From positions 124,001-188,000 of IMG/VR virus record IMGVR_UViG_3300024239_000013: a DNA stretch of 64,000 nucleotides; one strand, given 5' to 3'. Positions 35,330-43,158 of the stretch are shown in pieces. Position 1 is the first letter of the stretch, and the number at the start of each line of letters is the position of its first letter. The position numbers and the translations under genes were made by a program. The notes under the pieces were generated by a model. That model had not been told where the DNA came from. It ran no database searches and saw only the letters and a list, made by a program, of their open reading frames with translations.

Positions 35330-35933
35330 TTATATAAAATTTTGACAAAATGATTTTCTGTGATATTTAGTAATTCCTATTTCTTTTATAGCTTTAATGT
35401 GATCTGCAGTACCATATCCAACATTTCTAATCCATAAATAATTTGGAAATTCCGAATCTAGATTTTGCATTAACTGATCCCTATGGACCTTAGCAAGAAT
35501 AGAAGCTGCAGAGATTTGTAATATTTTGGAATCACCCTTTACTACACATTCATATGGAATGTTATTGTGGCCTATAAATCTGTCACCATCAACATAAAGG
35601 AAATCTGGGGTTTTTGAACATGCATCTATAGCTCTTTTCATAGCTAAGTAAGTTGCTTGTAAAATGTTAATCTGATCTATCTCCAGAGGAGAACTAGCTC
35701 CAATTCCCCAAGATATTGCATTTTCTTTAATGACATTAGCTATCTCTTCCCTTTTTTTTGCGCTTTTGATAGATTTACTATCTTTTATTCTAGGATCTGA
35801 AAATCCCTCAGGTAATATCACAGCTGCTGCAACAACCGGTCCTGCTAGACATCCTCTGCCTTCAGCCCACCTCGTCCACGCCAGCAATAAATTTCAGCTC
35901 GCGAAGAAGAGGTGGATTATTTTTTTCTATCAT
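35330..35933 (-). CDS. rnhB: Ribonuclease HII interrupted by a 7-nt insertion (recoded gene or pseudogene)
   Basis: ATG 35933 gives MIEKNNPPLLRELKFIAGVDEVG*; GRGCLAGPVV, DSK, VDG, KGD, SAASILAKV.RD and HRKSF follow in another frame. Removing 7 nt gives a 198-aa intact protein. Confidence 0.88.
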
Positions 35934-36006
35934 TATTTATATTTTTAATTGATTTCCTTATTCTATCTATGGTTTCTTCTGAATGTTTCGTTCCATAGAA
36001 TGGATT
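35917..36006 (-). pseudogene. Homing endonuclease remnant (NUMOD3 motif)
   Basis: Translates NPFYGTKHSEETIDRIRKS...*; an in-frame stop lies just upstream and there is no start codon. Confidence 0.65.
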
Positions 36007-36060
36007 TTTTATCCTTCATCTTTTTCTTTATATTCAAAACTAGGATTCCTATCTGGACCC

Positions 36061-37638
36061 TTATTTGAGTTTTATTGTGGTGTATTCACCTTTAATAAAG
36101 TTTATATGTTGAGCCTTACCGTCATGATGTATTATAACATGAGACTGCAACCACCCGCTAGGGCCTAGGTTATAGTTAACCCTCAATTTAGTGGATGTTC
36201 CTACAGCTAAAGCTCCATCTTTTCTTCCTGGGCAGTGATAATGACCAACTACTATCTTGGTATTTAGTTTTCTGAATTGTAATAACGAACCTCTCGATCC
36301 ATTTGATCCAATATCTCCATGTTGACCTAATTCCCATCCATTAACAACAAAACTATCACTCCTACCTAAGGTTCTGAATTCTGGATATCTTTGATTGATT
36401 AGATATGGAATAACCCCATTTGGCGCTTCTCCTTTCAGTATCAAAGAACTATATTCCATGTATTCTATAGAATTTTTTAGTGTTGGCGCTTTTCTCCAAT
36501 CGGTTCCCTTTAACCATCGGTCTAGAAAATCGTCATGATTACTTCTAACTATGGTAACATTATACTCAGAAAATTTACCCAATCCATCTAGCATAGAATC
36601 TATTTCACCTTTTAGTGAATTAGTTCCATCCATTTCCCTTTGAAATTGTACAAACGGGTCTTTTATCTCGTGATGATTTATAGAAAGACCGTCAAAAACA
36701 TCATGGAGGACTATATTATCTGGTTTTATTATCTTGAACATGTCAAGAGTTTTTTGAATGACCCTATCGTCATGTTGTCCGTAGTGGAGATCTCCTAATA
36801 TAGCTGCTGATATGCTTTCGTTTTGACTTATAACATTTTTTCCCAAATCGGGATCATATTTTACATTATAATATAAATCATTAAAATCCCCATCGTCAGT
36901 TGCTGTTACCTGTCTAGCAAAAAATGTCGAAGAATCTTTTATTTCTACAATCACAAATCCTAGAGTATGATGAAATTCTCCTTTTTTTCCAGATTTAGAA
37001 TCCGTATAATTTTTAACCGTACATGCTCCAGTTGTCATCATCATCTTGGGTAGATTTCCCTCCAATACTGGTATAGTTTCTAAATGTACCTTAGGAGATC
37101 CAAAAACACAAGAATTAATTCCGCTCATACCTTGAAGTCCTGTCATTGGATCTACTGCTGTAGGCTGTATCTTAACATCCGACATGATCCACATATGTTT
37201 ATGTACTTCATGTCTATTAGCATCCAGATATTCTTCTATTCTAGGAGACCAGGTATCATAGTTCTTGTCAGTAAAAACTGATGTTGGATTCTTATATCTA
37301 CCAGCTATAATATGGATATCTGCATTTATAAAATTAGCATAAGCTTCTATATTAGAAATGAAGGTCTCGTGTACAGGTGTATCATTTTGTGCCCAAGTGA
37401 TTATAAATTTCTTCTTCTTCTTATTGAATTTTCTTTCTCTGGCTTTTATTAATTGTGGGGATTCTTGGATGGCTTTTTCAGTTATGCCTAGTTTAGAGAT
37501 CCAGCTTTGGACAGTTCTTTCGGATTTACCTAGATATTGGCTTAGCTGTTTCATTCTCTCGTCCCAGCTTAGTTTTCTATTCCAATAAATCCCAGAAAGG
37601 TCCGAAATATTTTCTGGAGTTAAGTCTGAAAACTTCAT
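36061..37638 (-). CDS. HTH plus metallophosphoesterase-fold protein (T5 A1-like)
   Basis: N-terminal HTH (SERTVQSW); IITWAQN; GDLH, SNHD, HGD.GSNGSRG and GHYH. Confidence 0.6.
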   Translation of the reverse strand: MKFSDLTPENISDLSGIYWNRKLSWDERMKQLSQYLGKSERTVQSWISKLGITEKAIQESPQLIKARERKFNKKKKKFIITWAQNDTPVHETFISNIEAYANFINADIHIIAGRYKNPTSVFTDKNYDTWSPRIEEYLDANRHEVHKHMWIMSDVKIQPTAVDPMTGLQGMSGINSCVFGSPKVHLETIPVLEGNLPKMMMTTGACTVKNYTDSKSGKKGEFHHTLGFVIVEIKDSSTFFARQVTATDDGDFNDLYYNVKYDPDLGKNVISQNESISAAILGDLHYGQHDDRVIQKTLDMFKIIKPDNIVLHDVFDGLSINHHEIKDPFVQFQREMDGTNSLKGEIDSMLDGLGKFSEYNVTIVRSNHDDFLDRWLKGTDWRKAPTLKNSIEYMEYSSLILKGEAPNGVIPYLINQRYPEFRTLGRSDSFVVNGWELGQHGDIGSNGSRGSLLQFRKLNTKIVVGHYHCPGRKDGALAVGTSTKLRVNYNLGPSGWLQSHVIIHHDGKAQHINFIKGEYTTIKLK

Positions 37639-41788: not shown

Positions 41789-42631
41789 CTAATCTGACTT
41801 GTTTAAAATGACATGTGTCCAAGCATCACCCCGACCTATTTTTCTGATACTTGTTATAGAGGTTTGAAAAATTTTAGCTATTTCGGTCACTTTAACATTT
41901 TCAAATAACATAGTTTTTATTTCAACGATTTGTGATTCAGTCAGTTTAACAGAAGATCCTCCTGAATCTGGAAATCTTCCACCTTCCCAACCTAAGCTTA
42001 CATACTTTTCATACTCGGAGGAGTTTATTTTTATACATTCTCCCGTTTCTAGATTTCTTATCCATTTCTTTCCGAACTGTGAGTTTTTATTCCCCTTACC
42101 ATGGGATTTTTTTGATTCCTTCATCTTTAAAATCGCTTCCGGTGTATGCTTTCGGTCTTTAAACATGTCCAGTCTATATGCACCCTTTTCATAGAGTTCT
42201 TTGGCTTTATTAACAGCCCTTTCTCTTCCTCCCCTTGTGCTCTCGATAAATCTATTTCTATAGTCATCGTCTTTTAATTTCTCGACTAATGCTTTATTTC
42301 CGGCCCGACAAAAATCTCTCAGATGAGTCTCGTTTATTATCCCACCGCCACCTCCCGGTTGTAAATTCATACACATCGGATCATTCAATAGATCCTCGTT
42401 AACTAATAAAATCTCTCTGTTTCTTAATGATTCTCTGTCGTCGAAATATTCCAAAATCTCCTTGGTGTGTGCTTCCTTACCATGCCTTCTTATCGAATTT
42501 CTTATTCTTTTTCCCCCACCCATATAACCATCATTTAGTTTATCTGTTGAGTGCATTCCAATATAATATCTTTTGGTTTTGGTGCAAGTTATTTTGTAGA
42601 TGTAGTGGTATTTATGTTCTTTTCTTGCCAT
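41789..42631 (-). CDS. Free-standing GIY-YIG homing endonuclease (Seg-like)
   Basis: YIYKIT...YYIGMH, Y.GGG, NUMOD3-like KHTPE...KNSQFG and C-terminal HTH; GGATATATA upstream. Confidence 0.88.
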   Translation of the reverse strand: MARKEHKYHYIYKITCTKTKRYYIGMHSTDKLNDGYMGGGKRIRNSIRRHGKEAHTKEILEYFDDRESLRNREILLVNEDLLNDPMCMNLQPGGGGGIINETHLRDFCRAGNKALVEKLKDDDYRNRFIESTRGGRERAVNKAKELYEKGAYRLDMFKDRKHTPEAILKMKESKKSHGKGNKNSQFGKKWIRNLETGECIKINSSEYEKYVSLGWEGGRFPDSGGSSVKLTESQIVEIKTMLFENVKVTEIAKIFQTSITSIRKIGRGDAWTHVILNKSD

Positions 42632-42685
42632 TTCTATACTTTAGTTTAGATTATATATCCAAACTAAAGTACGAAATCGCGTCAG

Positions 42686-43158
42686 TGGAGACGGAGGGAA
42701 TCGAACCCTCGTCTTGATCAAATGTCCAATGGAATCATTCACAGGCTTAGATAATTTTTCTAAATTAACAAAATATGAAGTTTGATGTACGTGGGAAACA
42801 AAACTTCCAAAAAACCTGGTCGGCAACTAGTTATTTTATACAGGTCTGCCCCTGCCACCCGCACTCTTTCGCCCCCTGTATAGATCGACTACGATCAGAT
42901 GCTCAAGGTCAGCCTTGACTATTAAGGGAGCCATCTGGATTTTATTTTTCGTTTTTCTGTTTCTAGGTAAACGAATAACCACATGCTTAAGCAGCTACTG
43001 TGTAACTTACTTTAGAACTAGGAGTACCAAACGAGTTGATTACATCCCAAACATTTTTTTCGCCATTTAAAGCTTGTATAGGTTATTATAGAGTTTCCGA
43101 TACTAACTCTGCCTGCATCTCAAAGAACTGAATCTGTCAATCGAAACCGATCGTCCCC
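42686..43158 (-). ncRNA. ssrA: tmRNA, about 473 nt; tag GEKNVWDVINSFGTPSSKVSYTVAA at 42987-43064
   Basis: 5' GGGGACG pairs with 3' CGTCTCC-A including G3:U70; T-arm GAGGGTTCGATTCCCTC; tag ends AA-stop; CCA is not encoded. Confidence 0.93.

What the first reader, a model, noticed from the sequence alone, without database searches (positions are those of the whole stretch)
35858..36006. Candidate 7-nt ribosomal hop in RNase HII, with a 5' hairpin and an adjacent homing-endonuclease remnant
Seen: the minus strand reads GAC GAG GTG GGC TGA A GGC AGA GGA. A take-off GGC (35865-67), stop TGA, one nucleotide and a matching landing GGC (35858-60) sit in the middle of the catalytic DEVGRG motif. Hopping GGC to GGC restores the motif exactly and gives 198 aa; the rest of the gene shows no decay. 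Immediately upstream, 35915-35867 folds in register (CCACCTCTTCTTCGCGAGC with GCTGGCGTGGACGAGGTGG, 16 of 19 positions paired), which is unusually GC-rich for this genome and ends at the take-off codon. A NUMOD3 remnant overlaps the start codon. Established: T4 gene 60 bypassing uses matched codons, a stop and an upstream stem-loop, and forms a mobile cassette with the upstream mobA endonuclease. Inference: this is an independent, miniature bypass cassette that destroys an endonuclease target while keeping rnhB expressed.
Basis: partly seen in the sequence, partly recalled or inferred. Interest (0 to 1): 0.92.

Follow-up and report, generated by a model that had tools for sequence, protein, structure and literature searches.

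The report
Mobile ribosome-hop cassette in phage rnhB
A giant phage's RNase HII gene is cut in its catalytic motif by a 6-7 base insert carrying a stop codon; the insert travels with a homing endonuclease and a hairpin, the gene stays under strong selection, and a short ribosome hop best explains this, which would be the first natural case of its kind.

Summary
It is not private to this genome and not an assembly error. I found 20 distinct versions in independent metagenome assemblies. All read GAG GTG GGC, then a stop, then 0 or 1 base, then GGN, inside the DEVGRG motif of RNase HII. All three stop codons occur. The landing codon is GGC, GGT or GGA. Three independent versions have a 6-base, in-frame insert instead of 7.

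Every version carries the same conserved hairpin of -26 to -34 kcal/mol; uninterrupted alleles give -2 to -8. The hairpin's 3' arm includes the first two bases of the take-off codon.

The insert belongs to a roughly 740-nt cassette with a GIY-YIG/NUMOD3 homing endonuclease. Near-identical genome pairs exist with and without the cassette. The endonuclease is intact in eight loci, decayed in others including this window, and gone in two. The hairpin, the insert and an intact downstream reading frame persist throughout, with dN/dS of 0.006-0.13.

Several versions have no start codon from which the downstream piece could be made separately. Only a frame-independent hop from GGC to the next GGN explains all versions with one mechanism. 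The hop itself is inferred; no protein data exist. I rate it a new variant of translational bypassing, independent of T4 gene 60.

The parts
35865..35933 (-). rnhB N piece: ATG plus 22 codons ending at the take-off codon GGC (35867-35865). It encodes MIEKNNPPLLRELKFIAGVDEVG, including the catalytic Asp and Glu of DEVGRG.
   Evidence: Across the cassette versions, 7 of the 8 third-codon positions in the loop and inner arm vary while the peptide is kept. The piece is therefore translated in this frame and is under selection.
35861..35864 (-). Untranslated gap: stop codon TGA plus one base (A).
   Evidence: In relatives the gap is TGA-A, TAG-A, TAG-T, TGA or TAA. A stop directly follows GGC in all 20 distinct sequences.
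35858..35860 (-). Landing codon GGC. Decoding would resume at AGA (Arg of GRG).
   Evidence: Relatives have GGC, GGT or GGA.
35330..35860 (-). rnhB C piece: 176 codons from the landing codon, plus the stop codon.
   Evidence: Pfam RNase_HII 1.2e-33; PDB 7uwh 1.8e-38. The frame is intact in every full-length relative. dN/dS is 0.006-0.13. The DGD and KGDS catalytic motifs are invariant.
35866..35916 (-). 5' hairpin of 17 pairs. The outer stem is UCCACCUC paired with GAGGUGGG. Its 3' arm contains the first two bases of the take-off codon.
   Evidence: MFE -29 kcal/mol, z = -4.2. 95% of cells are paired across 13 distinct rows, against 35-56% when partners are slid. The hairpin is present in all cassette alleles (-26 to -34 kcal/mol) and absent from all plain alleles (-2 to -8).
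35917..36009 (-). Remnant of the GIY-YIG/NUMOD3 homing endonuclease gene: the last 31 codons (30 aa plus stop). It overlaps the rnhB start codon.
   Evidence: Pfam NUMOD3 3.7e-5; tblastn 80% identity to residues 194-223 of the intact gene; alignment with L059 shows an internal deletion of about 590 nt.
36010..36060 (-). Leader of the cassette: the sequence that lies between the upstream gene's stop codon and the endonuclease start in intact cassettes.
   Evidence: Alignment with L059.
36061..37638 (-). Upstream 525-aa gene of unknown function. It marks the left boundary of the cassette.
   Evidence: No Pfam family above threshold.

Best explanation
This is a mobile cassette in the RNase HII gene of a group of uncultured giant phages. 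It has four parts:
- a free-standing GIY-YIG/NUMOD3 homing endonuclease gene;
- a replacement 5' end for rnhB that encodes a strong hairpin;
- a recoded GAG GTG GGC;
- a 6-7 nt insert (a stop codon, with or without one extra base, plus a second glycine codon) placed between the Gly and Arg codons of the catalytic DEVGRG motif.

Inferred mechanism. The ribosome translates the 23-codon N piece and pauses with peptidyl-tRNA-Gly on GGC in the P site and a stop codon in the A site. The anticodon lets go. The mRNA moves 6 or 7 bases. The same tRNA re-pairs with the next GGN. Decoding resumes at the Arg codon and gives an uninterrupted DEVGRG enzyme of 198 aa.

The hairpin refolds behind the ribosome and its 3' arm takes in the first two bases of the take-off codon. 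It probably pulls the mRNA forward and blocks re-pairing at the take-off site. This is what is proposed for the 5' stem-loop of T4 gene 60.

The insert most likely also disrupts the endonuclease's target in the conserved motif-coding DNA. That would protect genomes that carry the cassette.

Shown here: the anatomy, its recurrence, its mobility, its persistence after endonuclease loss, selection on both pieces, and the lack of an independent start. Inferred: the hop itself, the hairpin's role and the target protection.
For: 1. Recurrence. There are 20 distinct cassette sequences from viral and metagenome contigs. They were found with a pattern that constrained only the 5' arm and the loop. All have GAY GAG GTG GGC followed by a stop.
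2. All three stop codons occur at the same position, and no sense codon does.
3. Three independent versions have a 6-nt in-frame insert: L012 TAA-GGC, L042 TGA-GGA and L066 TGA-GGC. The other 17 have 7 nt. Only a frame-independent hop serves both lengths.
4. Linkage. In the unbiased protein-based sample, every allele with the insert has the hairpin and the special N-terminus, and every plain allele has neither.
5. Mobility. The tree needs at least 6 gains or losses. The pairs L020/L027 and L014/L015 are about 99% identical and L068/L002 is 99-100% identical downstream of the landing codon; L012/L007 is a looser sister pair (about 90-95%). Each pair differs by the cassette, whose right edge lies 0-30 nt past the landing codon.
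6. The endonuclease is intact in 8 loci, a remnant in others (including the window, L013, L021, L066, L067 and L068) and gone in L005 and L061. The hairpin, the insert and a 176-177-codon downstream frame are kept in all.
7. Selection. L005 versus L061 (both without endonuclease): dS 0.855, dN/dS 0.006. The all-cassette clade L053/L069/L054/L058: dS about 1, dN/dS about 0.06. The first 20 codons after the landing site show 7-12 synonymous against 0-3 non-synonymous codon differences.
8. In L012, L020, L042, L051/54/58, L053/69 and L066 there is no ATG, GTG or TTG in the downstream frame between the last stop and the landing codon.
9. The N piece evolves as coding sequence in its own frame and supplies the catalytic Asp-Glu that the C piece lacks.
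10. Literature. Synthetic stop-hops, in which 9 nt specify one amino acid, work in E. coli. Short natural counterparts of gene 60 have long been expected, and no natural in-frame stop hop was known in 2016 (PMC5009743). In the gene 60 family the endonuclease is likewise lost while the bypass cassette stays (bioRxiv 10.1101/2022.08.31.505936).
Against: - There is no protein, reporter or transcript evidence. The hop is inferred from sequence comparison alone.
- The landing codon is GGA in 7 of the 20 distinct sequences. That is a wobble mismatch for a tRNA-Gly(GCC) leaving GGC, so strict codon matching is not kept.
- Hairpin covariation is weak: two double changes, both in one sequence, and 51 of 500 shuffles reach the observed score. 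Part of the conservation may reflect recent spread of the cassette.
- Because the cassette spreads horizontally, much of the divergence between distant carriers predates invasion. The selection argument rests on the cassette-only and endonuclease-less clades.
- Release factor should compete at the stop codon, and synthetic stop-hops are inefficient. The yield is unknown.
- The window's genes lack Shine-Dalgarno sequences: 1 of 61 starts against a 10% background. The tempting idea that GAGGUGG acts as an internal SD 6-7 nt before the landing codon is therefore doubtful in this host.
Confidence: 0.7

Rival explanations
1. The 7-nt versions use a +1 frameshift at GGC-stop, and the 6-nt versions use stop-codon readthrough. 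Either way the product is a full-length enzyme with two extra residues (DEVG-x-G-RG).
For: A stop codon in the A site is a classic +1 stimulator, as in prfB (own knowledge; review PMC5009743). In 7-nt versions the +1 frame after GGC-T reads GAA, AGA or AGT, then GGN, and continues into the C piece. A GAGGUG element sits just upstream.
Against: Two different mechanisms would be needed for one conserved element, because three independent versions are in frame. GGC cannot re-pair in the +1 frame (GCU). The extra residue would be Glu, Arg or Ser, so it is unconstrained, right beside the catalytic Asp-Glu and ahead of the GRG motif. No relative in the sample has an insertion there. The genome does not use SD sequences.
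Confidence: 0.14
2. The interrupted rnhB is dead. The endonuclease's drive spreads a gene-killing insert, and intact downstream frames only reflect recent invasions.
For: Near-isogenic pairs show very recent gain or loss of the cassette. The cassette region is less diverged than the rest of the gene, so many carriers may be young.
Against: Carriers whose endonuclease has decayed or vanished still have intact 176-codon frames. Cassette-only clades show dS of 0.5-1.0 with dN/dS of 0.006-0.07 and invariant catalytic motifs. The stop codon, the GGC and the hairpin are kept in all 20 versions, and the only length change seen is 6 versus 7 nt. The N piece keeps AGVDEVG through synonymous changes.
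Confidence: 0.07
3. The C piece is made separately, by internal initiation or termination-reinitiation. It acts without the N piece or associates with it non-covalently.
For: Some versions have TTG, GTG or ATG in the C frame a few codons before the landing site. The window has TTG at 35887.
Against: Seven distinct versions have no canonical start there, and in the 6-nt versions the stop abuts the landing codon. The putative starts vary with synonymous wobble of the N frame (GAT/GAC). The C piece lacks the catalytic Asp-Glu, yet the N piece that encodes them is conserved as coding sequence.
Confidence: 0.04
4. The 6-7 nt are removed or skipped at the RNA level, or they are an assembly or sequencing artefact.
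For: Nothing found supports this. It is listed because RNA was not examined.
Against: Twenty distinct versions come from many independent assemblies. No known bacterial or phage system excises 6-7 nt. There is no homopolymer run that would allow polymerase slippage.
Confidence: 0.03

Closest known systems
Phage T4 gene 60 bypass cassette with the mobA homing endonuclease
   Same: A glycine take-off codon is followed by a stop and then a glycine landing codon. An mRNA stem-loop involves the take-off codon, and a 5' stem-loop is thought to drive forward movement. The insert lies in an essential motif-coding region beside a free-standing homing endonuclease. The endonuclease is often decayed or lost while the bypass element stays. 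Genomes exist with and without the cassette (bioRxiv 10.1101/2022.08.31.505936; here).
   Different: - The gap is 3-4 nt (a hop of 6-7 nt) rather than 50 nt.
- The gene is rnhB, not a topoisomerase subunit.
- The endonuclease is GIY-YIG/NUMOD3 rather than the HNH-type MobA.
- The take-off codon sits in the 3' arm of an upstream hairpin, not the 5' arm of a take-off stem-loop.
- The nascent chain is only 23 aa.
- The target gene is not split into two genes.
- The hosts appear not to use SD sequences.
- I saw no sign of common descent, but I did not formally compare the sequences.
[quoted passage not shown]
   Same: The 6-nt versions (GGC TAA GGC, GGC TGA GGC) have exactly this form. The 7-nt versions are the out-of-frame equivalent (PMC5009743).
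   Different: Those are engineered or accidental, inefficient and without dedicated stimulators. This one is natural, conserved, and tied to a hairpin and a mobile element. The review states that no natural in-frame stop hop was known.
Magnusiomyces capitatus mitochondrial byp elements
   Same: Mobile inserts are rendered harmless by bypassing. Take-off and landing codons are not always perfectly matched and two-out-of-three pairing is tolerated (PMC5009743). The GGA landing codons here are similar.
   Different: Byps are 27-55 nt, number 81 per genome, have an unused sense codon in the A site, occur in mitochondria and have no endonuclease partner.
prfB (RF2) programmed +1 frameshift
   Same: A stop codon in the A site and a purine-rich SD-like element just upstream.
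   Different: prfB needs a P-site codon that re-pairs in the +1 frame (CUU U) and an SD at a 3-nt spacing. Here GGC cannot re-pair at +1, three versions are in frame, and the genome lacks SD usage.
Proposed short bypass in the terminase genes of Streptomyces phage Hau3 and prophage Strep C.1, and the reported 29-nt hop in Prevotella loescheii plaA
   Same: Candidate short natural bypasses in a phage and in a member of the Bacteroidota (PMC5009743).
   Different: Different genes and signals. They have no endonuclease link and neither is well established.

Membership tests
Programmed translational bypassing (hopping) | The take-off and landing codons can be read by the same peptidyl-tRNA. | tested here: inconclusive
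   The take-off codon is GGC in 20 of 20 sequences. The landing codon is GGC or GGT in 13 and GGA in 7 distinct sequences. GGA matches only two of three bases for a GCC anticodon. The host's tRNA set is unknown, and the window has no tRNA genes.
Programmed translational bypassing (hopping) | A slow-to-decode codon (stop or rare codon) occupies the A site at take-off. | tested here: met
   A stop codon follows GGC in all 20 distinct sequences. TGA, TAG and TAA all occur.
Programmed translational bypassing (hopping) | Coding resumes independently of frame. | tested here: met
   Both 6-nt (3 independent) and 7-nt (17) versions exist. The downstream frames are intact in the 6-nt versions L012 and L042 (L066 is cut by the contig end) and in every full-length 7-nt version.
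Programmed translational bypassing (hopping) | A stimulatory mRNA structure involves the take-off region. | tested here: met
   A conserved 17-pair hairpin includes two bases of the take-off codon and is strictly linked to the insert. Its function as a stimulator is not tested.
Programmed translational bypassing (hopping) | A single polypeptide spans the gap and lacks the gap-encoded residues. | not testable with these tools
   This needs mass spectrometry or a reporter assay. Indirect support: both pieces are under selection and there is no independent start.
T4 gene 60 / MobA cassette family (by descent) | Insertion in the topoisomerase II large-subunit gene, with a homologous gap of about 50 nt and a MobA-type element. 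| tested here: not met
   The gene is rnhB, the gap is 3-4 nt and the endonuclease is GIY-YIG/NUMOD3. The element resembles that family in how it works but does not belong to it.
RNase HII (Pfam PF01351) | A profile match and the four acidic catalytic residues. | tested here: met
   The C piece scores 1.2e-33 over profile positions 7-198 and matches PDB RNase HII entries at 1e-35 to 1e-38. Asp-Glu lie in the N piece. DGD and KGDS are invariant in the C piece. All four residues are together only if the two pieces are joined.
GIY-YIG homing endonuclease (free-standing, Seg-like) | A GIY-YIG catalytic domain plus NUMOD3 DNA-binding motifs. | tested here: inconclusive
   The intact relative (L017) gives NUMOD3 at 2.4e-15, above the cut-off. 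Its GIY-YIG domain gives 2.7e-4 and 21.6 bits, just under the cut-off of 22.6. The window keeps only the last 30 aa (NUMOD3, 24 bits).
GIY-YIG homing endonuclease (free-standing, Seg-like) | Presence/absence polymorphism at one site, with co-conversion of flanking sequence. | tested here: met
   Four sister pairs exist with and without the cassette. Differences extend a variable 0-30 nt past the landing codon.
GIY-YIG homing endonuclease (free-standing, Seg-like) | The enzyme cleaves the cassette-free allele, and the cassette-bearing allele is immune. | not testable with these tools
   This needs an in-vitro cleavage assay or a co-infection experiment.
prfB-type +1 programmed frameshift | The P-site codon can re-pair in the +1 frame, and the site must change frame. 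| tested here: not met
   GGC would have to re-pair on GCU, which gives no match. Three versions need no frame change.

The most novel reading that the evidence does not exclude
This is the first natural, selected 'stop-hop': a frame-independent ribosomal bypass of only 6-7 nt. It would be driven by a 5' hairpin that captures the take-off codon. It arose independently of T4 gene 60 as part of a GIY-YIG homing-endonuclease cassette. It works in hosts that appear not to use Shine-Dalgarno pairing. If so, pairing an endonuclease with a bypass insert that disrupts its target would be a recurrent evolutionary solution rather than a one-off. The natural series of variants (three stop codons, three landing codons, two gap lengths) would amount to a ready-made mutational analysis.
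Probability: 0.65. Interest if true: 0.9.

Novelty: new variant of a known kind. Interest (0 to 1): 0.85.

Why it matters
Programmed translational bypassing has two established natural systems: the T4 gene 60 family and yeast mitochondrial byps. The field's main review says that shorter counterparts of gene 60 have long been presumed to exist. It also says that no natural in-frame stop hop is known (PMC5009743).

This locus offers such a case in a different gene, with a different endonuclease family and a minimal gap. It comes with about 20 natural variants that already indicate which features are kept: GGC, the stop codon and the hairpin. They also show which features are free: gap length, stop identity, and the third base of the landing codon.

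It would show that pairing a homing endonuclease with a bypass insert that disrupts its target evolved more than once. It would give a compact system of about 75 nt for studying how mRNA refolding behind the ribosome moves the message.

It also has a practical side. Gene callers will annotate such genes as broken, so similar cases are probably being missed.

Tried and rejected
- A near-identity DNA search of cultured phage records found nothing. A protein search found only relatives below 46% identity. The group is known only from metagenomes, so no annotated record could be consulted.
- The genome collection gave one hit, a GC-rich Chloroflexota MAG contig. On inspection it is a chance match, so it gives no clue to the host.
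- I looked for the same trick elsewhere. I scanned 80 loci holding relatives of the endonuclease (32-46% identity) for matched codon, stop, matched codon junctions. The only hits with a strong hairpin were the rnhB sites themselves. The other candidates lay inside longer open frames. The same scan of the whole window gave only chance gene junctions without hairpins.
- I considered GAGGUGG as an internal Shine-Dalgarno sequence placed 6-7 nt before the landing codon, as in gene 60. I downgraded this idea because only 1 of 61 gene starts in the window has an SD core, against a 10% background.
- I rejected stop-codon reassignment. All three stop codons occur at the site, and most versions also need a frame change.
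- The covariation test of the hairpin was not decisive.
- Literature searches for bypassing together with RNase HII or GIY-YIG found no prior report of this element.
The two pieces were analysed separately.
Full report
**1. The observation**

On the minus strand the window reads ATG (35933-35931), then 22 codons ending GAC GAG GTG GGC (GGC at 35867-35865). Next come TGA (35864-35862), one A (35861) and GGC AGA GGA (from 35860).

- The first piece encodes MIEKNNPPLLRELKFIAGVDEVG.
- The second piece is 176 codons and begins GRGCLAGPVVAAAV. It matches Pfam RNase_HII at 1.2e-33 over profile positions 7-198 of 199. It aligns from residue 19 of E. coli RNase HII, PDB 7uwh.
- The break therefore falls exactly between the Gly and the Arg of DEVGRG. 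The catalytic Asp-Glu lie on the short piece.
- The 76-nt stretch around the site folds at -29 kcal/mol, z = -4.2, and none of 200 shuffles folds as well.
- The stem has 17 pairs. Its outer part is UCCACCUC paired with GAGGUGGG. The last two G's are the first two bases of the take-off codon.
- Upstream, 35917-36009 encodes the last 30 aa of a NUMOD3-containing protein (Pfam 3.7e-5, above the cut-off).

**2. The insert is not private and not an artefact**

A scan of viral contigs with the C piece returned 36 loci. L001 is the window's own 319-kb contig.

Among the 27 close relatives, loci either had an insert at the same place or were uninterrupted.

I ran two DNA-pattern scans of viral contigs and one of metagenome contigs. 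Two of these scans, including the metagenome scan, constrained only the 5' arm and the loop. Together they raised the number of distinct cassette sequences to 20.

- All 20 read GAY GAG GTG GGC followed by a stop codon.
- The 7-nt forms are TGA-A-GGC (most), TGA-A-GGA, TGA-A-GGT, TAG-A-GGT, TAG-A-GGA and TAG-T-GGA.
- Three forms have a 6-nt in-frame insert: TAA-GGC (L012), TGA-GGA (L042) and TGA-GGC (L066).
- The three short forms sit on three different cassette subtypes, so they arose independently.

**3. The insert is part of a mobile cassette**

In eight loci (L012, L014, L017, L020, L023, L042, L059, L062) a 222-225-aa open reading frame lies between the upstream 525-aa gene and rnhB. Its stop codon directly precedes the hairpin.

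That protein gives NUMOD3 at 2.4e-15. It gives GIY-YIG at 2.7e-4, just under Pfam's cut-off.

On a tree of the C piece, cassette and plain alleles are interleaved. Well-supported branches force at least six changes.

- The pairs L020/L027 and L014/L015 are about 99% identical in both flanks. L068/L002 is 99-100% identical downstream of the landing codon. L012/L007 is a looser sister pair, about 90-95% identical.
- They differ by a block of about 740 nt.
- The block replaces the native intergenic region and the first 13 or so codons of rnhB.
- The block ends 0-30 nt beyond the landing codon.
- A variable right edge is what recombinational repair with co-conversion would leave.

**4. The endonuclease decays, but the insert, the hairpin and the gene do not**

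The window and L068 share an internal deletion of about 590 nt in the endonuclease gene, relative to L059. L013, L021, L066 and L067 carry other remnants. In L005 and L061 the endonuclease is gone; the spacer is only 78-81 nt.

Every cassette locus whose contig reaches far enough has an intact 176-177-codon downstream frame. The DGD and KGDS catalytic motifs are invariant.

**5. Selection**

Pairwise dN/dS among cassette carriers is 0.006-0.13.

Because the cassette moves horizontally, comparisons between distant carriers mostly reflect history before invasion. The informative comparisons are within groups that most likely inherited the cassette.

| Comparison | State | dS | dN/dS |
|---|---|---|---|
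| L005 vs L061 | both lack the endonuclease | 0.855 | 0.006 |
| L053/L069 vs L054/L058 | all-cassette clade, same subtype, no endonuclease | about 1.0 | about 0.06 |
| L013 vs L021 | endonuclease remnants | 0.51 | 0.039 |

Within such groups the first 20 codons after the landing site differ by 7-12 synonymous and 0-3 non-synonymous codon changes. Translation therefore enters this frame at or just before the landing codon.

The N piece also evolves as coding sequence. Seven of the eight third-codon positions in the loop and inner arm vary, and Val19 uses all four codons. AGVDEVG is retained.

**6. What this rules out**

- Independent initiation of the C piece. Seven distinct versions have no ATG, GTG or TTG in the C frame between the last stop and the landing codon. 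In the 6-nt versions the stop abuts the landing codon.
- Stop-codon reassignment. All three stops occur, and most versions also need a frame change.
- A dead gene. This does not fit sections 4 and 5. It also does not fit the fact that the only length variation among the 20 versions is 6 versus 7 nt at a single position.
- A +1 frameshift. This could serve the 7-nt versions, giving DEVG-E/R/S-G-RG. It cannot serve the three in-frame versions, which would then need readthrough.

A hop from GGC to the next GGN explains every version with one mechanism. It restores the canonical motif with no extra residues.

**7. The hairpin**

Cassette alleles fold at -26 to -34 kcal/mol over the 70 nt before the landing codon. 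Plain alleles fold at -2 to -8. The link between hairpin and insert has no exception.

Across 13 distinct rows, 95% of cells are paired. Only 35-56% are paired when partners are slid.

Synonymous variation falls on loop and bulge positions or keeps pairing (A-U to G-U, G-C to G-U). GAG GTG GGC, CCT and GCT never vary.

True compensatory changes are few: two pairs, both in L042. The shuffle control is not significant (51 of 500). The structure is therefore conserved, but covariation does not prove it.

The hairpin persists where the endonuclease is gone. Its role therefore belongs to rnhB expression, not to endonuclease expression.

- At take-off only the inner part of the hairpin can be folded.
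- Zipping up the outer stem pulls the message forward.
- It also buries the take-off codon, so the peptidyl-tRNA can re-pair only downstream.

**8. An idea I downgraded**

GAGGUGG is also a near-perfect Shine-Dalgarno sequence. It sits 6-7 nt before the landing codon, the spacing reported for the GAG element of gene 60.

However, only 1 of 61 long reading frames in the window has an SD core upstream, against a 10% background. This suggests a host with SD-independent initiation, possibly a member of the Bacteroidota (my inference). The SD role is therefore doubtful here.

**9. Comparison with what is known**

The architecture mirrors T4 gene 60 with mobA: a glycine take-off codon, a stop, a glycine landing codon, stem-loops, an adjacent homing endonuclease that is often lost, and genomes with and without the cassette.

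It differs in gene, endonuclease family, gap length (3-4 nt against 50), the position of the take-off codon in the structure, and the length of the nascent peptide. It is not a member of that family by descent.

The 6-nt versions are formally identical to the synthetic 'stop-hops' in which 9 nt specify one amino acid. The 2016 review says that no natural case is known. It also says that shorter counterparts of gene 60 'have long been presumed' to exist (PMC5009743).

The imperfectly matched landing codons recall the two-out-of-three pairing discussed for yeast mitochondrial byps.

Searches of the paper library found no report linking bypassing with RNase HII. They found none linking a GIY-YIG cassette with bypassing outside the gene 60 family.

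**10. Limits**

- There are no protein or RNA data.
- The efficiency of the hop is unknown, and release factor must compete at the stop.
- The GGA landing codons are a mismatch for the expected tRNA.
- The endonuclease's target and the protective role of the insert are inferred.
- The phage group has no cultured member and the host is unknown.

**11. Verdict**

- The element is a new variant of programmed translational bypassing. It very probably arose independently of gene 60.
- My confidence that the interrupted gene is functional and the cassette is mobile is about 0.9.
- My confidence that the mechanism is a hop is about 0.7.

Noticed in passing
window 42683-43158 (-): A full-length tmRNA gene: Rfam RF00023, 78.8 bits against a gathering score of 47, covering model positions 1-374 across 476 nt, so it contains about 100 nt of insertions. 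ARAGORN did not call it.
   Followed up: partly
window 41789-42631 (-): A second, intact GIY-YIG-type endonuclease ORF of 280 aa, 30% identical to the rnhB-cassette enzyme. It lies immediately downstream of the tmRNA gene. I did not test whether it is a homing element that targets the tmRNA locus.
   Followed up: no
whole window, upstream of 61 ORFs of at least 120 aa: Gene starts are almost devoid of Shine-Dalgarno cores: 1 of 61 against a 10% background. The leaders are A/T-rich. This points to a host with SD-independent initiation, such as a member of the Bacteroidota.
   Followed up: partly
L068:200-1348 versus window 35330-36110 and L002: L068 has the window's exact cassette, including the same deletion in the endonuclease gene. 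Its rnhB C piece is nearly identical to the plain allele L002 (dS versus the window is 1.9). The endonuclease-less cassette, or the gene body, has therefore been exchanged by recombination just after the landing codon.
   Followed up: partly
L054:5188-5600 (-) and L051, L058: In this cassette subtype the endonuclease position holds a different 61-aa ORF (MSDRRTEYRAAGLG..., hydrophobic). The open frame of the N piece extends to 40 codons.
   Followed up: no
L053 and L069 (upstream of the cassette): My motif search did not find the usual upstream 525-aa gene, so the cassette-bearing rnhB may sit in a different neighbourhood in these contigs.
   Followed up: no
window 36061-37638 (-): The 525-aa gene upstream of the cassette is conserved in nearly all related loci but matches no Pfam family above threshold. 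Its C-terminal part has His/Asp-rich motifs (GDLHYGQHDD, VGHYHCPG) reminiscent of a metallophosphoesterase. That resemblance is only my impression.
   Followed up: no
window about 5888 (-) and about 12393 (-): Two places have long open frames in the same frame separated by a single stop codon flanked by like codons: ATT TAA ATA with 517 and 422 codons, and AAA TAG AAA. They have no hairpin and are probably ordinary gene junctions.
   Followed up: no
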